A DNA stretch of 63,468 nucleotides, filler included, from Octopus bimaculoides (Eukaryota), in NCBI RefSeq assembly GCF_001194135.2. It is 6 parts of 5 records of this genome, joined end to end, with 100 filler letters (N's around TTAATTAATTAA, not from the genome) between each part and the next. Parts side by side here need not be neighbours in the genome. Positions count along the whole stretch, not along the records: positions 19,781 to 35,426 come from NC_068998.1; 5 more parts are not named here. One strand, 5' to 3'. A program made the translations under genes and the position numbers. Position 1 is the stretch's first letter. Each line of letters begins with the position of its first letter. The notes below the pieces were generated by a model. It was not told the origin of the DNA. It did not search any database and saw nothing but the letters and a program-made list of their open reading frames with translations. Positions 20,140-35,426 of this stretch are shown here, in pieces.

Positions 20140-21111
20140 AATATTTTTGTTCGATGTATCAATTCCGTTTTGGCCTTCTGATCTATCTATCTATCTATGT
20201 CTTTCTTCTTCTTCTTCTTCTTCCCTCTCTCTCCACACACACACATCGCTGAAGTCCTCCAGCAGTTTGCTTTTTACCGTCTCGGTCGACCGATTAAGAC
20301 ACAAGAAGGCCTCGATCCGTGTTGAATAGGCATCTACAATAATGAATATGTTGCCGATATTTCGAACATATGCCCAGTCCATATGCACACGAACCCAGGG
20401 CCCAGAAATAGGCCATGAATCATTTGCCTATACTAAGTTTGGCCTAACTCTCTGGCAACTATCGCAAGATTTGACAAACTTCTCCATCGAGTAAGCCAAC
20501 CCAAGCTACAAAACACAGAGTCGTGCCTTCTTAATTGTTTGTTGAATACCCATGTGTGTGTCGTGTATTTTAGATAATACTGCGGCTCTATAAGGCGCTG
20601 GAATAAACGGACGATTTTTATGATATATTAAGCCATTTTCGTATGTTAGAAAATCCTTATCTTTAACAAATGCACGTTCCAGATTCGAGACCGACCTCCA
20701 ATTTTGCTGTAAAATTCTTTCTTTTATTTTGTTATATAATGCGTTTGCACTTAGTTATTTTCGGATGTCTTCCATCATTACGGGATCGATGTCCTGCCAC
20801 GCGCTATCGCATTTGTCTAAATGCGAAGCAAAGAAAATTATATCACCACTGTTATTCTCATTATACCTCAATCGAGAGAGAGCGTCGACGTGCGGAATAC
20901 TTTTACCCAAAACATGCTTAACAACGAAACCGTACTGTGATAGGATCAAACTCCACCTGGCTATTTTTCGTGAGGCACGCTGAGGTACATCTAAATCCTT
21001 CTCGAACAGGGGTTTTAAAGGCTGGTGATCAGTTTCCAAATGAAACTGCTTTCCTAGAAGGAAATGTCGCAGTCTATCCACGCACCATACCACTGCATAA
21101 GCCTCTCTCTC

Positions 21112-21190
<79 letters not shown>

Positions 21191-22920
21191 GCTCGACCAG
21201 TTTCGTTGTGCCTGGCTAAAGGTGTGGTTTATGAATTCTACTGGGATAACACCCCAGCTACTGCAATCAAGGATACATCTACAGTGAGAGTGCTCATTTT
21301 CTCCATCGAGTACGGTTGCAAGATGGAGCCTCCGAAAGATGAGTGATAAGCATACGGAAAGCCTTATCTTGCTCTTTACCCCATTTAAATTCTGTTGATC
21401 TAGCTGTTAAGAACGGTTCGACTTTTTTCAGCACACGCCGGGACAAATCTTTTGTAGTAATTCGTCAGACCCAATATTCTGTCAATATCTTCCTTCGATT
21501 TTCGTACTTGTATGTCCTTTTAGTTTTGCTACCAATATCTCACTTGAGATATTTTCATTTCCAGAAAAGTCAATTTTTTTTTTTCTGGAGAATGACTTTT
21601 CTTTGTTAATAGAGAACTGCGCCTTTGTTAGCCTTACAACTATTGCACTTTCTCTGCTCGTCAATTTTGCTTCGCTACTAGCATAGATGAGGATATCATC
21701 TTGGTGTACCCTGACTCTTTAGATCCCTTTTAATAGAGCTTCCATGCAGCTCTGAAATATGCCACTCGAATTCTTAAGTTCCATTTGAAATCTGTTAACC
21801 AGGTAGAAACCATTGGTTGTATTAATAGCACAGATACGCTTTGCTTCTTCTGCTAAAGGTATTTGTCAATACGCATGCTTTAAATCGAGAATGGAGAAAA
21901 ATTTCGCACCTGACATACCAGGGAAAATGGTGTCGATTGATAGTATAGGAAAAGAATAAGTGTCAATATGTGCATTTAAATGAGCCTTGTAATCGACACA
22001 CATGCGAAGAGATCCATCTTTTTTTCTGAGCCATGCCACAGGTGAGGCACATCTGACTCCAGAGTAATCCGACGGTGTGATGATGCCCATCATTTCCAAC
22101 TTCTTTCATTCATCTTTAACTTTTTTTTTTCCAAATGTACTGGAATGCGTCTCGCCGAACTCATCACGCTATATCTCGCATCAGAGCACAAAACATTAAC
22201 CTCTGGGAACACATCCATGTTCAAATTGAAACATAACGAACTGTCTTTAATGATATCTTTTCCAACCAGCCCAAAAGAGTATGGGCTGTCTTCCACATAA
22301 ATTTTCGTGACTCGTCGGGATTATTGAGATTAAATGTCATTCAGATTGATCCAACAACCTTTAGACCTGAACCATCAAAAGTGGTTAATCTGTCGTGGCA
22401 TGATTCGATTGGGATACCTAACTGTGAAGCAAATGATAACGGGACTATCGAACAAGCTGCCCTAGTATCCACTTTCATGTCTATGCTTTTGTTATTTATG
22501 AAATACTTGCAAAAACCCGTGTAATCTGCACTCTCATTGTTGTTTACGTTTAGCAACAAACTGTCGACAGATCCAGTCTTGCTCGGAGATACATTTATGT
22601 TGTCCACATGGCGATCGTTTCTAGATCGGCAAAATCTTGCAAAACGCCCAATTTGTCACACTTATTACAATTTTGCCCATATGCTGGACATGCACGAGCT
22701 TTGTGTGTACACCCACAATTTCGACTATTCACTACAATGTCATGACTGCTACTGGGGGTATTCTTGTTGACATTAAAGTTTGTTATTGTTTGTCAACTGC
22801 CCGCAAACAGCTTTCCGATTCTATAGTGGATGCGAGAGCAGCTATTTCAGAGTATTTCATTTTAGAATGACACCGTAACTGATCCAAAATTTCTAACTTT
22901 ACCTCTGCCGACGATAATCT
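20140..22920 (-). mobile_element. Degenerate Ty3/Gypsy LTR retrotransposon internal region (gag-PR-RT-RNaseH-INT)
   Basis: Gag zinc-knuckle remnant near 22640-22680, protease MKVDTRAACSIV, RT PVAWLRKKDGSLRMCVDYK, FFSILDLKHAY and HQDDILIY, RNase H FHLETDHQPLKPLF, integrase MHMDWAY...IIVDAYS. Domain order is Gypsy-type; many stops and frameshifts. Confidence 0.92.
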
Positions 22921-23080: not shown

Positions 23081-24119
23081 TGAAAAGAAGAAAATTTGAG
23101 GAAAAAGAGGAAGAAAGAAAAAAGCTGGTTATATGCGTAATTATTATCTCTGGTGGTAATAAAAAGCAATACAGCAGTAATAATAATAAAAAATGGTCTT
23201 CTTGGCTAACATTCTACTAAATTAGAAAATTTCTAGATCAACAATTTCTCACATTTATAGGAAACATCATGAAATCAAAACAAACAATTTCACTAATAAG
23301 GCTTGTGACTATGGCAAGAGACACTAACCTCAAATGTCATGCAGAGACTTCGGGAATTGCAAAACGACCTTTTTAACTATTCGATCATGCTGATACATAA
23401 GAAATCAAGACCTATCATGAGCTTTAACTGATTTAACACAATGGATAGCCGTTTGTGTGAGTAGAGATACTACAGCAAACCAACACAAAACACGAACTAC
23501 TGTAAACTGTATGAGATAACCGCTCAAGTTATTATAGCTCGGCCATTACTACAGAGACACTTTAGAAATAAAGTACTTGCTCACGACATCTCAACCGTGT
23601 ATTCTATATCCATTTGAGCAGCAGCGACCCTACGTCACAATATTACTTGAGCCATGAACTGGGAACATTTTGCTCTGTCTTCACATTTCTCTCCTGAATA
23701 AAATCCGAATTTAACCCATACAACATTTCGGAATTTCCGATTATTACGTTTTAGCCATTAATTAATTTATTTTATTCCATTTTATTTCACTTAATTTCAC
23801 TCTTAATTGAACATAAGAACATGGAGATGTGAGAGAGCAGAAAAATAACCTACAAACTCATCGACAATGCAAGGTTTATTTCCCTTTAATTGTCTACCAT
23901 TATCTTCATTTTGCCATTACAACTTATATAAGAATGATTTCTCTTCTTCCATATTAACCATGATATCAAATCGAAACTTGTAACATTACGTCAATGCGAT
24001 GTTTGTTCTGATCAAGCAGAAGGCCGTATCCCGTATAACGACGACGACCACCTATACATACATACATACATACATACATACATACATACATACATACATA
24101 CATACATGCATGCATGCAT

Positions 24120-26787: not shown

Positions 26788-27148
26788 GGTAGGATATAGT
26801 TTAATCGGACTAATAATACTTGCTCACGACGTCTCGACCGTGTATTCTATATCCATTCTTGAAAATTTTATTTTGAAGACGGTAAAGTATGCATTGAGGT
26901 GTTATGATTTGTTAACATTTCACACAACTAACGAACAGCAGTATTTGATGATGTCGATGATGCTGATGATGATGATAAAGAAGAAGAAGAAGAAGAAGAA
27001 GAAGAAGAAGAAGGAGAAGGAGAAGGAGAAGAAGAAGAAGAAGAAGAAGAAGAAGAAGAAGAAGAAGAAGATGATGATGATGATGATGAAAGTTATTTAG
27101 TTGAATCTGGGAAAATTATAAAGCGAAAGACGACCGTTGATCTTTCTC

Positions 27149-27182
<34 letters not shown>

Positions 27183-27678
27183 TTTCTTTCTTTCACTTTT
27201 TTTGAGCTGAGGATGTAGAGACAAACACCGTTGCTGCAATTTTATCGTCATTTTAGTATTGGACAGTATTGATTTCTTACATAGGCATAAGGCTGCCATA
27301 TCTGGAGGTGGTAGTGGTGGTGGTGGTGGTGGTGGTGGAGGTGGTGGTGATGATGGATACATAGTCAATTACATTGATCCCAGTAGCCAACTGATACTTA
27401 CTTTATGAAATCCGAAAGGATGACAGGCAAAGTTGGCTTCGAGAGAACTTGAACTCGGAACATGAAGGCGTGTTATTAAATACGGCAAGGTATTTCCTTT
27501 GAGCACTAAAGATTCCACCAAGAAATAATTTGTAAGGGGTAAAAAAATGACAGAAGCTTGAAGCAATAAATAGAATAATTTATTCCTTAAAAAATATGTA
27601 TGTACGTTGTACGTATGTACATATGTATGCATGTATGTATGTATGTATGTATGTATGCATGTATGTATGTATGTTATA

Positions 27679-27718
<40 letters not shown>

Positions 27719-28378
27719 NNNNNNNNNNNNNNNNNNNNNNNNNNNNNNNNNNNNNNNNNNNNNNNNNNNNNNNNNNNNNNNNNNNNNNNNNNNNNNNNNN
27801 NNNNNNNNNNNNNNNNNNNNNNNNNNNNNNNNNNNNNNNNNNNNNNNNNNNNNNNNNNNNNNNNNNNNNNNNNNNNNNNNNNNNNNNNNNNNNNNNNNNN
27901 NNNNNNNNNNNNNNNNNNNNNNNNNNNNNNNNNNNNNNNNNNNNNNNNNNNNNNNNNNNNNNNNNNNNNNNNNNNNNNNNNNNNNNNNNNNNNNNNNNNN
28001 NNNNNNNNNNNNNNNNNNNNNNNNNNNNNNNNNNNNNNNNNNNNNNNNNNNNNNNNNNNNNNNNNNNNNNNNNNNNNNNNNNNNNNNNNNNNNNNNNNNN
28101 NNNNNNNNNNNNNNNNNNNNNNNNNNNNNNNNNNNNNNNNNNNNNNNNNNNNNNNNNNNNNNNNNNNNNNNNNNNNNNNNNNNNNNNNNNNNNNNNNNNN
28201 NNNNNNNNNNNNNNNNNNNNNNNNNNNNNNNNNNNNNNNNNNNNNNNNNNNNNNNNNNNNNNNNNNNNNNNTATATATATATCGTTATTATTGTTACTTT
28301 TTCCTTTATTTTCTTTAAATTGTTAAGAGTTCCTTGTAATGTTAGCGTATCTTTACAGGTTTAGAAATCAGAAGTCCT

Positions 28379-29464
28379 TCAAAGTTCTATATCTGTCGGT
28401 AACGCTTTTACAAAAAGGATTTCGTTAGGTGTGCTGAACTTATACTTCTGAGGGCAGGATGTGTTCTGAATGTTTTTGTCTGTTAACACTTTACCGTCCT
28501 TCATGTAACTCTTTTTGCTTTTTGTCTGGCACCAAGTTATCAATTTGTCAATCACGGGCGTTTCTTGCTGAAGAATTTCAGCAACGCCCCGAATTACAAT
28601 TAAACCATACGATAAATATTCTGAGATTCGCTCTTCTAAATCTGGTGTGTATTCTGACTTTCTCCTATCTTTTTTCATTGGGTGCTTAATGTCTCCCCAT
28701 ATCTTACAAGTTTTCAATGTTGTCAGTAAGCTACTGCTGTCTCCAATGCAGTCTTTAAATCCGGCAAACCAGTCTTCTATTCCTTTATAGTCGTTGATTT
28801 TCACTTCTGGTTTGCTTGTTTTTATAGCCTGGACGATTTTAGAACATTCTTTAGAACAGTTTGAAATCATTTCGGCTGTCTTTTCGCTGACGTCTTCAAA
28901 CAACCCCACTTCACTTTCCAGCGGCTTTTCGTCCCATTCACTCCATCTTCCGAACAAAAGACAGCATTCAAGATATACGAAGGGCGAGAGGAGTACAGAC
29001 ATAAAGTTAAGAGAATTTTGAAGCGCGCAGTCACCGCCAATTATTAACTGCAAAATTGACAGTGGCCCACGTTTCGGGGGAGATGTCCCGAACAGAGTGG
29101 AGGTTACAATCGATGCTACTGTCACCTTGACATCAATTTGAGAACCAAATTTGACTTGTTCGCATATCCAAGGACACATCTCTAAGTTAACGATGGTACA
29201 TTGTTCACCAAGCTCTTCGAGACATGTCCGACACTGATATTCAAAACCTGATCTGCCAGGTACACCTATGATAACTGTTCTCTTTTTAATGTATTTCTTC
29301 ATGGCTTTTAAATAATCCTGGAAATTGTTTGGAGAAGAAGACAGTATGATAACATCACTTTCAGTGACGAAATCTCCTGCTTTATCCGTTATTGTTCCAG
29401 GTCTTCCTTTTTCGGGATACATAGAACCGTCTTTTCTTGGAAAATTGACCACCATTGTTGCATC
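28379..29464 (-). CDS. Opine/octopine dehydrogenase-like protein, coding exon 2 (361 aa; joined protein 412 aa)
   Basis: Acceptor TTTCAG|GAT at 29465/29464, in phase with exon 1. Open frame with family motifs GFEYQCR, EMCPWICE, LFGRWSEWDEKP, CSKEC, HPMK, YGLIVIRGVA, DKLITWCQ and TSCPQKYKF. AATAAA on the minus strand at 28305-28310, about 70 nt after the stop. Confidence 0.93.
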   Translation of the reverse strand, partial: DATMVVNFPRKDGSMYPEKGRPGTITDKAGDFVTESDVIILSSSPNNFQDYLKAMKKYIKKRTVIIGVPGRSGFEYQCRTCLEELGEQCTIVNLEMCPWICEQVKFGSQIDVKVTVASIVTSTLFGTSPPKRGPLSILQLIIGGDCALQNSLNFMSVLLSPFVYLECCLLFGRWSEWDEKPLESEVGLFEDVSEKTAEMISNCSKECSKIVQAIKTSKPEVKINDYKGIEDWFAGFKDCIGDSSSLLTTLKTCKIWGDIKHPMKKDRRKSEYTPDLEERISEYLSYGLIVIRGVAEILQQETPVIDKLITWCQTKSKKSYMKDGKVLTDKNIQNTSCPQKYKFSTPNEILFVKALPTDIEL

Positions 29465-30599
29465 CTGAAATATTAAATAATAAAATTGTCTGTTAGAAAA
29501 TATACTTACAAAACAAACAAAAAAAGCTAATAGAAAAAAATCAGAAAAGAAAATTTGTTATTAGCGACAGAAGCAGTATTGGTTCAGAATAACATTCTGT
29601 ATATCTTACTCAACGTAGATATACTATAGAAAGCCACAAAACTACAGTATTCGTCTTGAGAATACTAAAGTGTTTTGTGGCTTTCTATAATATATGAACG
29701 TTTAAGTCAGGTATATAGAAATAAAAATCATTACTGTAATCCAACATTTTTCCTCAGAGTTACTGTCGTTGCTACCTTGTGTAAATTAATAACACAAGAT
29801 TTCCAAATTGGTGACACTAACCTTGTGGATTCTTCATCGGTATCGACGATGAGCATCCAATTATCGAATAATTGAATTCTTACATCTGAAATTAAGCAGT
29901 GAACCACTTCGTAATTTCACAGACATAGATATCCTTAATGCTTTAACACTAGAGTCAGGTCGAATCAGCGTCTCACGCTATGATTAGCCTAGATCTTTGA
30001 ATTGCATGTGCAAGCCAGAAAGAAAAGGGAAAAACTAACAAATTTCAGTGCTACATTGACATTGTTTAGCAACCACGAAATGATGAAAGGCAAAAATGAC
30101 TTCGGCGAGACTTGAACTTTGAAACGCATGGAACCAGAGTGAATACTGCTAGGTATCTTGCGTGACATGATGACGATTTTAGAAATTCATCCCCTTACGA
30201 ACTCTTACAACATTAGAGAAATATATGATTTCCCGAATTGACAAAGTTATCTCAGATTAAATTTTCGAAAATTGTAAATTTCATTTTATTTGCCTTGAGA
30301 AACAAAATTCTGCCCTTTCGAGTCTGACTCTTCATTTTAGATATTTAAAGAAGAGCAACAAAAATTCAATAGGTTATAGCAGTACGTACGTTTCGTACAA
30401 ACTTCATTTATTCATGTAGTGAGAACACTACATAAAATGTGCACTGAAAATGTACTCCTCACCTGCATAATGGAATCTCATTTTAGAAAGTCATTTTGTA
30501 GATGTGTGCAAAAACACGAGTAGGAGAAGAAGAAAATACCATCTTGACTGGGCTGCCATTCAACAGTCTAGTGAATCAAACAAGAATTTAATTTCTATA

Positions 30600-31300
30600 T
30601 AATCTAATTGGAGGGGTAAGATAGTAGTAATTTCAATTTAGAGGAAGGTAGATTAAGTAGTAATGGACAGCAGGTTAGGGGTAAATCAAGCAAGAAAAAA
30701 AGAAATACTTCAACTGTTAACATAGTTGATGAGATAAATCTTCCTAGCTCAACCAATATCAATTGCATATCCAGTAATACAACCAACAATATTGATATAA
30801 CCAATTTAGATACTTGTATCAATAATCAACATAGTTATATATATATAGCTAATAATCCCCTTGATTGCAATTGTAGAATTAAAGCCCACTGCCCGATATC
30901 TGGTCGTTGTTTAGCCCGTAATGTGGTCTATAAATGTATAGTAGCTACTCCAACTAATAATTACATTTATGTTGGTTACACAATCAACCTTAAACAGCGA
31001 TTATACAATCATTTTTCCTCGTTTAGACTTAAACATAAGGCCAATAGCACATCATTATCTAATAAAATTTGAGAATTGAAGGAAAATGGTATCGATTTTA
31101 ATCTTAAATGGGAAATCGTCAGGAGAGCACAACCCTATAGAAATAGTAGATACGACTGTGGACTGTGCTCTATGGAAATTTATGAAAATTTTAAACTTAA
31201 GGATAATCCTAATCTAATTAACAATAGATCCTAATCTAATTAACAATAGATCTGACCTTGTCGGAGGAACAAATGGTTGTCTTCCATAAGAAACATTGCT
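30600..31300 (+). mobile_element. Penelope-like element fragment (GIY-YIG endonuclease), in intron 1
   Basis: From 30866: CNCRIKAHCPISGRCLARNVVYKC...YIYVGYTINLKQRLYNH...NSTSLSNKI*ELKENG...WEIVRRAQPY...CGLC. In-frame TGA at 31070-31072. Confidence 0.88.
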
Positions 31301-31590
31301 CTGGTGAGTGATCTTTCAGTTGTGGATACAATATCATGTACAACGATCGACGGAGACCAAGAAGATCGTCACTTTATTGCCGTGTCTATTGGCTGAAAGT
31401 CGCACGCACGTACACACTTACACACACATACGTGCATAAAAGCACACACACACAAACATATTCAATCACTCGCACAAACAAGCGCACAAACACATACGTA
31501 CAAAGGGTACCGAAAAGACAAACATCGATTACACCTTTGGTCATAGATGGAGCAATATAGTGATCAGAGTCAAAGGCGCTCGTCTGTATA

Positions 31591-32499
31591 GGGCATTCCT
31601 ATAAGTAGGTTATCTCCCTTGGCTAGGCGGCGCTCCATGTAGATAATTAAACTTCCGGAGGCTACCCACGCCATTGTTATTGTTTTACGTCTTATCATGG
31701 ATATAAAGCAGCTTGATGATTCAGCTATCGAAGTACTTACTGTGCCTGAGTTAAAGAAATATTTAAGATTATATGGACAGTATGTTACTGGAAGAAAGGC
31801 GGACTTGACTGAAAGGTTGAAAGGAATAAAAATTCTGTCGATGAAGAATGTCAACAAAGTAAATTCATCGGACGATAAGTCTGAAGTATCGGACGATACT
31901 TCAGACAGGAATAAGCAGAAGNNNNNNNNNNNNNNNNNNNNNNNNNNNNNNNNNNNNNNNNNNNNNNNNNNNNNNNNNNNNNNNNNNNNNNNNNNNNNNN
32001 NNNNNNNNNNNNNNNNNNNNNNNNNNNNNNNNNNNNNNNNNNNNNNNNNNNNNNNNNNNNNNNNNNNNNNNNNNNNNNNNNNNNNNNNNNNNNNNNNNNN
32101 NNNNNNNNNNNNNNNNNNNNNNNNNNNNNNNNNNNNNNNNNNNNNNNNNNNNNNNNNNNNNNNNNNNNNNNNNNNNNNNNNNNNNNNNNNNNNNNNNNNN
32201 NNNNNNNNNNNNNNNNNNNNNNNNNNNNNATTTTACCACGACAGACACGTACACAGCACCGAATACCACGATGTGAGTGAAAGCTGCTCTCACTGTATTG
32301 TCCGGTGTCTGGTAATCCCTTCGATACCGACATCAAACCAAAAAAAGAATCCTGACCACAGAGTGTGGGTAATTATGTCAAATGTCACTGGCAATGTGCA
32401 TTCAGCTGATTGCAACTGTTAAAGCAAGTCACTGAGCATGCGTACATGTCATACGGGAGAGTTCCAATCAGGGGTGGATAACACCTTATAGGAAAGCCT
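31591..32499 (+). mobile_element. Internally deleted Kolobok-type DNA transposon carrying a SAP-domain plus truncated SWIM-like ORF, inside intron 1 of the dehydrogenase-like gene
   Basis: Imperfect TIRs (GGGCATTCCTATAAGTAGGTTATCTCCC vs reverse complement AGGCTTTCCTATAAGGTG-TTATCCACCC) with TATA on both flanks (31587-31590, 32500-32503). ORF from 31697 has SAP-like LTVPELKKYLRLYGQYVTGRKADLTERL; after the gap, VWVIMSNVTGNVHSADCNC ends at a stop. Superfamily assignment is by domain and terminus resemblance. Confidence 0.7.
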
Positions 32500-32554
32500 T
32501 ATACCAACAGCAATAGCAGCAGCAGTAGCAGAAACAACAGCAACAACAACATAC

Positions 32555-32707
32555 CTTTGCTTTCAGAGTAGTTTTCCAGTTCTCCGCTGCTTTGCTTTCT
32601 GTGGCAAAAACCGTGACTTCCATGTTAGGTCTTGACGAAGCCAATCCTGCTATTAGTTGGGAAGTAGGATTACTTCCACACACCGTAATCTTCACTGGGC
32701 TACCCAT
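32555..32707 (-). CDS. Opine/octopine dehydrogenase-like protein, coding exon 1 (51 aa; N-terminal Rossmann strand-helix)
   Basis: Translates MGSPVKITVCGSNPTSQLIAGLASSRPNMEVTVFATESKAAENWKTTLKAK, resembling the N-terminus of molluscan octopine dehydrogenase (VKVCVCGGGNGAHTLSGLAASR...). Phase-0 donor AAG|GTATGT at 32555/32554. A polypyrimidine tract plus AG at 32714-32713, just upstream of the ATG, implies an unseen 5'UTR exon. Confidence 0.88.
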
Positions 32708-32984
32708 TGTACCTTCAATGAAACAAGAAAAGAAAAAAAAAAACCAACATATTTTATTATTAGATCTTGTTCCTGCTATTTAGAAAAGTAACATTAACAA
32801 TCCTCTCTCTGCTAATTAAGACAGAAATATTGGTCTCAAATTTTGCCGGCAATATTAAGTCGGTTACATTGACCCCATTGTTCAACTGGTACTTATTTGA
32901 TCGACCGCAGAAGAAAGAAAGGCTAAGTCGACCTCGGTGGCTTGCCTAATACATACATACATACATACATACATACGTACATAT

Positions 32985-33015
<31 letters not shown>

Positions 33016-33023
33016 AATATATA

Positions 33024-34745: not shown

Positions 34746-35390
34746 GTAAGTGAACTGATACACTTGAAAAAGGACGCTAGTCTAACCCAGATACCTTTCC
34801 CGGATGGTCTTCTAATTATTTACAACAACTGCTAAATGAACTAAGTATTTTCCATCCCTTCTCCCAACCCTCGCTTTTTCCAATTTACCAGCATTCTTAT
34901 TGGTAATTCTATAATTGTCCTATCTCCTGGGTTTTTTTCTCTCTCTTCCTCATTTTTCAAATTTATCAGCGTTTTTCTTGATTATCTTCTCGTTTTGACT
35001 GTTGTTCAACACATATACATGTTCGTCTGATTAATTATCCCTCATTCTCCACGCCAACTACATTCTCTACGCTAACCACATTCTCCACTACCGTCTTTAG
35101 ACATCTAATTAGTCACACTTTTTAATTTAAAGAACAAACATGCAAAAGCTTTCACAAAGTGTGCTGCTCAAAACGTTAGATAATCCATCTTCTTCGCAAA
35201 AAACCACTGATTCTTCACTTTTGAATTGTTTATATTCACAAATTACCGACTCAAGCCATCACCAGTTTTCTCAAATCCTATTGCTTACTTTAGTATTAAT
35301 CTATGCAGGCCAAATACATTACAAAATCTTCCCCTCTCTCTCTCTCTCCCTCTCCCCTCACTCCCCCCTCTAGTTATCTATCTATCTATA

Positions 35391-35426
<36 letters not shown>

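What the first reader, a model, noticed from the sequence alone, without database searches (positions are those of the whole stretch)
28379..32707. Intact opine/octopine dehydrogenase paralog that appears to have lost its catalytic machinery (candidate pseudoenzyme)
Seen in sequence: a spliced 412-aa ORF with canonical splice sites, no stops or frameshifts, and a poly(A) signal. Established knowledge: scallop (Pecten maximus) octopine dehydrogenase uses an N-terminal CGGGNG dinucleotide-binding loop, a His212-Asp329 catalytic pair and Arg324. By-eye alignment to the recalled sequence gives CGGGNGAH to CGSNPTSQ, FVHPAILFGRW to YLECCLLFGRW (His to Glu), FYQG to LFED, and NRYLTEDIP to ERISEYLS (Asp to Tyr, plus a one-residue deletion). 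Structural motifs along the whole protein are retained. Inference: the fold is being kept for a non-dehydrogenase role, such as ligand binding, regulation of the active enzyme, or a structural role like the enzyme-crystallins known from cephalopods.
Basis: partly seen in the sequence, partly recalled or inferred. Interest (0 to 1): 0.8.

Follow-up and report, generated by a model that had tools for sequence, protein, structure and literature searches.

The report
Conserved catalytically dead octopine dehydrogenase paralog
Octopuses keep, under clear purifying selection, an intact copy of the muscle enzyme octopine dehydrogenase that has lost its cofactor-binding loop and its catalytic His-Asp pair, so it most likely does a non-enzymatic job that is still unknown.

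Summary
On the minus strand a two-exon gene (32707-32555 and 29464-28379, GT/AG intron) encodes 412 aa. The product is identical to the Octopus bimaculoides UniProt entry A0A0L8HN49. The N gap (31922-32229) lies inside the intron and hides no coding sequence. HMMER and two MAFFT alignments to scallop OcDH agree on the changes: GxGxxA becomes G-S-N-P-T-S, His212 becomes Glu217, Asp329 becomes Tyr334, and Tyr325 is deleted. Arg324, Glu142 and Trp278 are kept. Sixteen of 35 family-invariant positions are changed, against one to three in four intact members. The fold is retained (AF2 pLDDT 90, TM 0.91 to 3IQD). Orthologs with the same substitutions occur in O. vulgaris, O. sinensis, a further Octopus-like species and Argonauta hians. 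dN/dS is 0.14-0.28 among the Octopus species and about 0.05 against Argonauta, so this is not a dead copy. The next relatives are at most 36% identical. No paper in the searchable library describes it. The gene is already annotated as "octopine dehydrogenase-like"; the new point is that it is a selected pseudoenzyme. Expression, ligand and function remain untested. Similar, independently degenerate OpDH-like paralogs appear in a bivalve and a chiton.

The parts
32555..32707 (-). Coding exon with the start codon (residues 1-51). It encodes the former beta-alpha-beta dinucleotide-binding unit.
   Evidence: Donor is AAG|GTATGT. The same exon is present in O. vulgaris (L001 41828-41980) and Argonauta (L002 10001-10153).
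32660..32677 (-). Codons for G11-S-N-P-T-S16, the degenerate GxGxxG/A loop. The second Gly is Asn here and Glu in Argonauta.
32713..32714 (-). AG splice acceptor 6 nt upstream of the ATG, preceded by a pyrimidine tract. It is used by O. vulgaris isoform CAI9736205.1, which has a 5' exon about 32 kb upstream.
   Evidence: The junction ..DVC|TM.. of P0001 fits T+GT ACA ATG.
29465..32554 (-). Intron (GT..AG, phase 0). It contains the assembly gap 31922-32229 and fragments of mobile elements.
28379..29464 (-). Second coding exon (residues 52-412 plus the TGA stop).
28967..28969 (-). GAA codon for Glu217, at the position of catalytic His212 of Pecten OcDH.
   Evidence: The codon is GAA in three Octopus sequences and GAG in Argonauta.
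28616..28618 (-). TAT codon for Tyr334, at the position of Asp329 of the His-Asp dyad. Argonauta has CAT (His).
28628..28630 (-). CGA codon for Arg330, the retained counterpart of the 'NADH sensor' Arg324. The following Tyr325 is deleted.
28305..28310 (-). AATAAA hexamer 69 nt downstream of the stop codon; a candidate poly(A) signal.
   Evidence: The flank is 95% identical to O. vulgaris. Its use as a poly(A) signal is not shown.

Best explanation
This is an octopod-lineage paralog of molluscan octopine/opine dehydrogenase. It has become a pseudoenzyme and is maintained by selection.

Shown:
- The gene is intact and has two coding exons.
- Its product keeps the two-domain OcDH fold.
- It has lost the second glycine of the Rossmann phosphate-binding loop, the catalytic His212 (now Glu) and its partner Asp329 (now Tyr, or His in Argonauta). 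Thirteen further positions that are nearly invariant in the family are also changed.
- These changes are shared by Octopus and Argonauta.
- The sequence evolves under purifying selection in both domains.
- A long stem branch is followed by a short, conserved crown.

Inferred:
- It can no longer bind NAD(H) in the canonical way, nor catalyse the reductive condensation of pyruvate with an amino acid.
- The active octopine dehydrogenase known from octopus tissues is encoded by another gene.

Most likely mode of action (inference, about one chance in three): the old inter-domain cleft is still the working surface and now only binds something. Two observations point that way. The most invariant stretch among octopods is residues 194-221, the helix-kink-helix that forms the arginine site in scallop OcDH. 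The two side chains that hold the guanidinium group in the scallop enzyme (Glu142 and Trp278, here Glu146 and Trp283) are kept. The protein would then act as a binder or sensor of arginine, an opine or another guanidino compound, or of a protein partner, rather than as a catalyst.
For: Family and fold:
- phmmer to PDB 3c7a gives E 9e-69 over the full length.
- Pfam PF02317 scores 45.5 bits against a cutoff of 30.
- The AF2 model has pLDDT 89.9 and pTM 0.89.
- Foldseek gives TM 0.91 to 3iqd.

Lost residues:
- Searches agree on the substitutions.
- Across about 80 intact representatives, G11 is conserved in 94%, H212 in 100%, R324 in 98% and D329 in 98%.
- The octopod protein keeps 19 of 35 family-invariant columns. 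Pecten OcDH and three other members that keep the cofactor loop and dyad (P0008, P0010, P0011) keep 32-34.

Roles of His212, the His-Asp dyad, Arg324, Glu142, Trp278 and the Rossmann fold in Pecten OcDH are taken from PMC2924402.

Conservation:
- Orthologs occur in O. vulgaris/O. sinensis (94% identity), an unnamed Octopus-like species (P0184) and Argonauta hians (82%), all with the same substitutions.
- NG86 dN/dS is 0.14-0.28 among the Octopus species, with Fisher p 7e-5 to 7e-16.
- dN/dS is about 0.05 against Argonauta, where dS is about 2 and saturated.
- Arg122 is coded AGA in Octopus and CGT in Argonauta; Glu217 is GAA and GAG.
- Domains I and II are equally conserved, 0.80 and 0.81 invariant positions. 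The longest invariant run is 194-221.

Divergence from relatives: identity drops from 83% (Argonauta) to at most 36% for the next relative. The octopod stem is the longest branch in the OcDH-type clade.

An active enzyme exists in octopus: ODH activity was measured in O. vulgaris (PMC5473251).
Against: - No expression, protein or activity data could be reached. The only transcript-level support is the existence of RefSeq and ENA gene models whose evidence I could not inspect.
- Glu217 paired with Tyr334 (His334 in Argonauta) could in principle form a different acid-base pair, so a new chemistry is not excluded.
- Non-canonical Rossmann loops that still bind nucleotides exist.
- Retention of Glu146 and Trp283 is weak evidence for ligand binding, because the whole protein is constrained.
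- The canonical octopus OcDH sequence could not be retrieved, so the duplication event was not dated or placed.
Confidence: 0.72

Rival explanations
1. It is still an enzyme. The active site has been re-wired (Glu217 with Tyr334/His334, Arg330 and Arg122) and now carries out a different reaction, possibly without NAD(H) or with the cofactor bound in a non-canonical way.
For: - Purifying selection is strongest around the former active-site segments.
- In Argonauta the pair is Glu/His, a swapped version of His/Asp.
- Arg330, Glu146, Cys152 and Trp283 are retained.
- Gln118 is replaced by Arg in all octopods.
Against: - The second Gly of GxGxxG/A is Asn or Glu, and a Pro follows it. From general knowledge of Rossmann folds this should clash with, or repel, the pyrophosphate.
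- The residue at the 329 position differs between Octopus (Tyr) and Argonauta (His), which is unusual for a catalytic residue.
- Sixteen of 35 invariant positions are changed.
Confidence: 0.15
2. It is a structural or bulk protein recruited from an enzyme, as cephalopod S- and Omega-crystallins were. It would be expressed at very high level in one tissue such as lens, skin or sucker.
For: There is precedent in cephalopods (general knowledge). The protein shows loss of catalysis with a retained fold. Its pI has shifted to 7.8-8.2 from about 5-6, and it has roughly twice as many cysteines as canonical members.
Against: No expression data are available. It is a single-copy gene with no tandem expansion within the flanks seen. 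The pattern of strongest conservation in the old cleft is not what a purely bulk role predicts.
Confidence: 0.08
3. It is a decaying or recently dead duplicate (unprocessed pseudogene), or an artefact of joining sequence across an assembly gap.
For: Catalytic residues are lost. The assembly gap and inserted mobile-element fragments lie in the intron.
Against: - Reading frames are intact in five octopod sequences, including Argonauta, where synonymous sites are saturated.
- dN/dS is far below 1.
- Splice sites and intron position are conserved.
- The window is colinear with the O. vulgaris chromosome sequence across the gap.
Confidence: 0.02

Closest known systems
Octopine dehydrogenase of Pecten maximus (PDB 3C7A/3C7C/3C7D/3IQD; EC 1.5.1.11)
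   Same: Full-length homology at about 33% identity and E 9e-69. Same two-domain fold, TM 0.91. Arg324, Glu142, Cys148 and Trp278 equivalents are retained.
   Different: The GxGxxA loop is degenerate. His212 is Glu, Asp329 is Tyr/His, Gln118 is Arg, Arg149 is Glu and Tyr325 is deleted. Two small insertions are present. The pI is basic and there are about twice as many Cys.
Other degenerate OpDH-like paralogs of molluscs found here: Tegillarca granosa KAJ8306082.1 (P0154/P0006), Liolophura sinensis XP_064605857.1 (P0164/P0015), and unnamed P0005 and P0007
   Same: They belong to the OcDH-type clade and also lack His212 and Arg324. P0005 is the nearest relative of the octopod clade in NJ trees, with bootstrap 67-74.
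   Different: Each has a different set of replacements (H to Y, G or R; R to S, Q, P or deleted). All keep Asp329, and two keep GxGxxA. They are only 28-36% identical to the octopod protein. A common origin of the 'dead' state is not supported (bootstrap 38 or lower).
Cephalopod enzyme-derived crystallins (S-crystallin from GST, Omega-crystallin from ALDH) and pseudoenzymes in general
   Same: An enzyme fold is retained after loss of catalytic residues and kept by selection. This is general knowledge and was not tested here.
   Different: No evidence of lens or other high-level expression, and no gene amplification. The parent family is different.
Bacterial opine dehydrogenases (CENDH 1BG6; staphylopine, pseudopaline and yersinopine dehydrogenases)
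   Same: Same superfamily fold, TM 0.59-0.71.
   Different: They are distant (8-13% identity) and catalytically competent.

Membership tests
Opine dehydrogenase family (Pfam PF02317 Octopine_DH; OcDH-type of molluscs) | Significant sequence match to the family model and to a solved member over the full length | tested here: met
   PF02317 scores 45.5 bits against a cutoff of 30. 3c7a gives E 9e-69, query 5-402 against chain 3-396.
Opine dehydrogenase family (Pfam PF02317 Octopine_DH; OcDH-type of molluscs) | Two-domain fold: a Rossmann-type domain I plus a helical domain II | tested here: met
   AF2 pLDDT 89.9. Foldseek TM 0.91 to 3iqd and 0.71 to 1bg6.
Catalytically active NAD(H)-dependent opine dehydrogenase (EC 1.5.1.x) | GxGxxG/A dinucleotide-binding loop | tested here: not met
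   G-S-N-P-T-S in Octopus and G-S-E-P-T-A in Argonauta. The second Gly is conserved in 94% of representatives.
Catalytically active NAD(H)-dependent opine dehydrogenase (EC 1.5.1.x) | His-Asp catalytic dyad (His212/Asp329 in Pecten numbering) | tested here: not met
   Glu217 and Tyr334 (His in Argonauta). His is 100% and Asp 98% conserved in intact representatives. The role of the dyad is taken from PMC2924402.
Catalytically active NAD(H)-dependent opine dehydrogenase (EC 1.5.1.x) | Arg324 'NADH sensor' | tested here: met
   Arg330 is conserved in all octopod sequences; the adjacent Tyr325 is deleted.
Catalytically active NAD(H)-dependent opine dehydrogenase (EC 1.5.1.x) | Measured opine-forming activity and NADH binding | not testable with these tools
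   Needs recombinant protein.
Pseudoenzyme (conserved inactive homolog of an enzyme) | Clear homolog of an active enzyme that lacks residues essential for catalysis | tested here: met
Pseudoenzyme (conserved inactive homolog of an enzyme) | Maintained by purifying selection across species, so not a pseudogene | tested here: met
   dN/dS is 0.14-0.28 (p 7e-5 or lower) within Octopus and about 0.05 against Argonauta. The ORF is intact in five sequences.
Pseudoenzyme (conserved inactive homolog of an enzyme) | Expressed as a protein and shown to be inactive | not testable with these tools
   Only gene models exist (A0A0L8HN49, XP_014770905.1, XP_029646135.1, CAI9736205/6). No transcript contig was found.
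Enzyme-derived crystallin | Very high expression in lens or another refractive tissue | not testable with these tools
   No expression data were reachable.

The most novel reading that the evidence does not exclude
Octopods have turned a spare octopine dehydrogenase into a non-catalytic sensor or binder of arginine, octopine or phosphagen-related metabolites, or into an enzyme with a re-wired Glu-Tyr/His site and NAD-independent chemistry. In either case the old inter-domain closure would read out ligand binding. The similar degenerate copies in a bivalve and a chiton would make 'dead opine dehydrogenases' a recurrent, unrecognised class of molluscan proteins.
Probability: 0.2. Interest if true: 0.7.

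Novelty: new member of a known kind. Interest (0 to 1): 0.5.

Why it matters
Opine dehydrogenases are the textbook terminal glycolytic enzymes of molluscs and are used as markers in cephalopod phylogenetics and physiology. A conserved family member that cannot be a dehydrogenase has three consequences.

- Database labels such as 'octopine dehydrogenase(-like)' will mislead metabolic reconstructions and transcriptome or proteome interpretation in octopus.
- It offers a clean natural case of an enzyme becoming a non-enzyme. The template structure is solved, the loss of the cofactor loop and dyad is defined, and the stem is long while the crown is conserved.
- It hints that such losses recur in molluscs.

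The gene itself is already annotated and its function is unknown, so the result is a good lead rather than a discovery of a new kind of system.

Tried and rejected
- Retrieving the canonical octopus or squid OcDH for a paralog/ortholog tree and rate comparison failed. The three word-indexed homolog searches returned only the octopod cluster, Argonauta, bivalve-like sequences and a few others. The profile search did not even return members of its own query alignment, so 'no squid ortholog found' is weak evidence.
- An intact OcDH about 60% identical to Pecten (P0175, locus L008) is of unknown taxon and shares no repeats with the octopod loci. It could not be used as 'the octopus enzyme'.
- Naming the source of P0004 and P0005 failed. 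The run accessions SRR11004897 and SRR29346471 are not in the paper library. P0004's relatives are heterodont bivalves.
- Transcript evidence was sought by exact look-up of the window protein, its 358-aa exon-2 ORF and the O. vulgaris 412-aa isoform. The Logan contigs for P0184 turned out to be genomic, with the intron present.
- Tandem OpDH copies in the flanks: none in the window piece, in 57 kb of O. vulgaris or in 22 kb of Argonauta.
- Literature searches for an OpDH pseudoenzyme, for the accession numbers or for 'octopine dehydrogenase-like' in cephalopods found nothing relevant.
- The first bootstrap tree with Biopython's calculator timed out and was replaced by a numpy implementation.
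- One search was an unneeded alignment.
Full report
**What is there**

The finding lies on the minus strand of a piece of Octopus bimaculoides genome.
- The ATG is at 32707 and the first coding exon ends at 32555 (AAG|GTATGT).
- After a 3090-nt intron the second exon starts at 29464 (TTTCAG|GAT) and runs to the TGA at 28381-28379.
- The spliced CDS is 1239 nt and gives 412 aa with no internal stop.
- The product is identical to UniProt A0A0L8HN49, 'Opine dehydrogenase domain-containing protein', O. bimaculoides. RefSeq holds a shorter model, XP_014770905.1, named 'octopine dehydrogenase'.
- An AATAAA lies 69 nt after the stop, at 28310-28305.
- A pyrimidine tract and an AG at 32714-32713, 6 nt before the ATG, form a splice acceptor. 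The O. vulgaris isoform CAI9736205.1 uses it with a 5' exon about 32 kb upstream. The ATG and the 412-aa ORF are unaffected; isoform CAI9736206.1 is 412 aa.

**The assembly gap**

The N run 31922-32229 lies inside the intron. Four results show that it hides no coding sequence and that its two sides belong together.
- The alignment to scallop OcDH runs without a break across the exon junction.
- tblastn with scallop OcDH finds only the two exons in the window, in 57 kb of the O. vulgaris chromosome and in 22 kb of Argonauta hians.
- Both orthologs have the same phase-0 intron after Lys51, 4547 nt in O. vulgaris and 444 nt in Argonauta.
- blastn shows the window and the O. vulgaris locus to be colinear in five blocks. 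The gap falls between window 32521/31590 and L001 42014/42436.

Only the true intron length is uncertain.

**The substitutions are real**

phmmer against the PDB gives Pecten maximus OcDH (3c7a) at E 9e-69, query 5-402 against chain 3-396. That alignment and two MAFFT alignments agree on the following.

| Pecten OcDH | Octopod protein |
|---|---|
| G9-G-G11-N-G-A14 | G11-S-N-P-T-S16 (G-S-E-P-T-A in Argonauta) |
| His212 | Glu217 |
| Asp329 | Tyr334 (His in Argonauta) |
| Tyr325 | deleted |
| Gln118 | Arg122 |
| Arg149 | Glu153 |
| FYQG | LFED |

Several residues are retained:
- Arg324 as Arg330
- Glu142 as Glu146
- Cys148 as Cys152
- Trp278 as Trp283

According to PMC2924402:
- NADH binds the Rossmann motif.
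- A His-Asp dyad is the proton relay.
- His212 coordinates the arginine carboxylate.
- Arg324 senses the NADH pyrophosphate.
- Glu142 and Trp278 hold the guanidinium group.

In a census of about 80 intact representatives from an exhaustive HMMER search, the second glycine is conserved in 94%, His212 in 100%, Arg324 in 98% and Asp329 in 98%. Of 35 columns conserved in at least 85% of the family, the octopod protein keeps 19. Pecten OcDH and three other members that keep the cofactor loop and dyad (P0008, P0010, P0011) keep 32-34.

**The fold is kept**

AlphaFold2 on a 20-sequence alignment gives pLDDT 89.9 and pTM 0.89, with the beta-alpha-beta unit and the helical domain in place. Foldseek finds scallop OcDH first (3iqd, TM 0.91), then Arthrobacter CENDH and the bacterial metallophore opine dehydrogenases. 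Pfam PF02317 is matched above its threshold.

**It is not a dead gene**

Orthologs with the same substitutions were found in four other places:
- O. vulgaris and O. sinensis, 94% identity
- an unnamed Octopus-like species, present as genomic Logan contigs L005-L007 (P0184)
- Argonauta hians, 82% identity

Nei-Gojobori dN/dS results:
- Among the Octopus species (window, O. vulgaris, P0184 species), exon 2 gives dN/dS 0.14-0.28, with dS 0.10-0.24 and Fisher p 7e-5 to 7e-16.
- Against Argonauta it is about 0.05, with synonymous sites saturated (dS about 2).
- Subtracting exon 2 from the full CDS gives about 0.12 for exon 1 between O. bimaculoides and O. vulgaris. The former nucleotide-binding unit is therefore also constrained.

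Arg122 is AGA in Octopus and CGT in Argonauta. Glu217 is GAA and GAG. The two domains are equally conserved, at 0.80 and 0.81 invariant positions. The longest run invariant in all octopods is residues 194-221, the helix-kink-helix around the former His212 site.

**Position in the family**

In the exhaustive search, identity falls from 83% (Argonauta) to 36% or lower for the next representative. NJ trees put the octopod clade inside the molluscan OcDH-type group on its longest branch. It is sister to P0005, an unnamed transcript that also lacks His212 (Tyr) and Arg324 (Ser), with bootstrap 67-74.

Other degenerate copies also lack His212 and Arg324, but each has a different set of replacements:
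- Tegillarca granosa P0006/P0154
- the chiton Liolophura sinensis P0015/P0164
- P0007

Their grouping with the octopod clade has bootstrap 38 or lower and may be long-branch attraction. No ortholog at 50-80% identity from squids, cuttlefish or Nautilus appeared. That index is demonstrably lossy, so restriction to Octopoda is provisional. Octopine dehydrogenase activity is measured in O. vulgaris (PMC5473251), so an active enzyme must be encoded elsewhere. I could not retrieve that sequence.

**Interpretation**

The best-supported reading is a pseudoenzyme: a duplicate of an OcDH-type gene that lost cofactor binding and the catalytic dyad. The long stem suggests a burst of change. Since before the Octopus-Argonauta split, the sequence has been held nearly constant.

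How it works now is inference. The old cleft is the most conserved part and the guanidinium-binding Glu and Trp are retained. I therefore favour a binding or sensing role for an arginine-, opine- or guanidino-type ligand, or a protein partner docking there. The pI has shifted from about 5-6 to about 8, and the cysteine count has roughly doubled (13-15, against 7-8 in Pecten and the three intact members listed above). Both point to a changed surface.

A re-wired enzyme (Glu217 with Tyr334/His334) cannot be excluded. It is disfavoured by the Asn/Glu and Pro in the phosphate loop and by the Tyr/His difference between genera. A crystallin-like bulk role cannot be tested without expression data. 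Pseudogene and assembly-artefact readings are refuted.

**Novelty**

The gene model is in public databases under an enzyme name. Six full-text searches, four of them aimed at this question, found no paper that describes it, or any opine dehydrogenase pseudoenzyme. Enzyme-to-non-enzyme transitions are a known kind, and cephalopods supply classic examples. I therefore file this as a new member of a known kind, of moderate interest, and a well-defined lead for biochemistry.

Noticed in passing
window 29731-29907 (minus strand), inside the intron: An open frame (..DVRIQLFDNWMLIVDTDEESTRLVSPIWKSCVINLHKVATT|GTAACT) matches the alternative N-terminus of the O. sinensis RefSeq model XP_029646135.1 (P0181). 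That model splices this frame to exon 2 and so replaces the whole beta-alpha-beta unit. The region is about 85% conserved in O. vulgaris but carries a stop in the P0184 species (L005). It has no Pfam match. It could be a real alternative exon or a prediction artefact.
   Followed up: partly
window 30923-31072 (+) and 31697-31921 (+), inside the intron: ORF fragments with a GIY-YIG nuclease domain (E 9.5e-8) and a SAP domain (E 6.9e-6). The SAP fragment runs into the N gap. They are probably remnants of mobile elements on the opposite strand and are absent from the corresponding O. vulgaris interval.
   Followed up: partly
window 20755-22732 (minus strand): Broken ORFs of an LTR-type retrotransposon: an RT-associated RNase H domain (E 6e-11), an RT-like stretch, an aspartyl protease and a CCHC-like knuckle, interrupted by stops.
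   Followed up: partly
L002 (Argonauta hians), codon for residue 334 equivalent: At the Asp329 position Argonauta has His (CAT) where Octopus has Tyr (TAT). With Glu at the His212 position this gives a Glu/His pair, a mirror image of the ancestral His/Asp dyad. Whether the two side chains interact is unknown.
   Followed up: no
P0006/P0154 (Tegillarca granosa KAJ8306082.1), P0015/P0164 (Liolophura sinensis XP_064605857.1), P0005, P0007/P0155, also P0009/P0156 (Patella), P0012, P0021, P0066: Several other OpDH-family proteins, named ones from molluscs and unnamed ones of unknown taxon, lack His212 (to G, Y, R or N) and often Arg324. Catalytically degenerate opine dehydrogenase paralogs may be common in molluscs and may have arisen more than once.
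   Followed up: partly
L001 1-9896 (O. vulgaris, minus strand): The upstream neighbour of the O. vulgaris ortholog is a gene with a Sua5/YciO/YrdC domain. It could serve as a synteny anchor when looking for orthologs in other cephalopods.
   Followed up: no
window 21100-21200, 24000-24100, 26980-27100, 27600-27718, 32950-33020, 35380-35426: Numerous microsatellites, (TC)n, (TACA/TGTA)n, A/G-rich runs and (TG)n, several of them abutting the N gaps. They probably explain why the assembly breaks there.
   Followed up: no
L008 10001-11224: An intact, intronless OcDH gene (P0175, about 60% identical to Pecten OcDH) sits in a 3.4-Mb contig of an ENA assembly of unknown animal origin. The octopod paralog has one intron in its coding sequence.
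   Followed up: no
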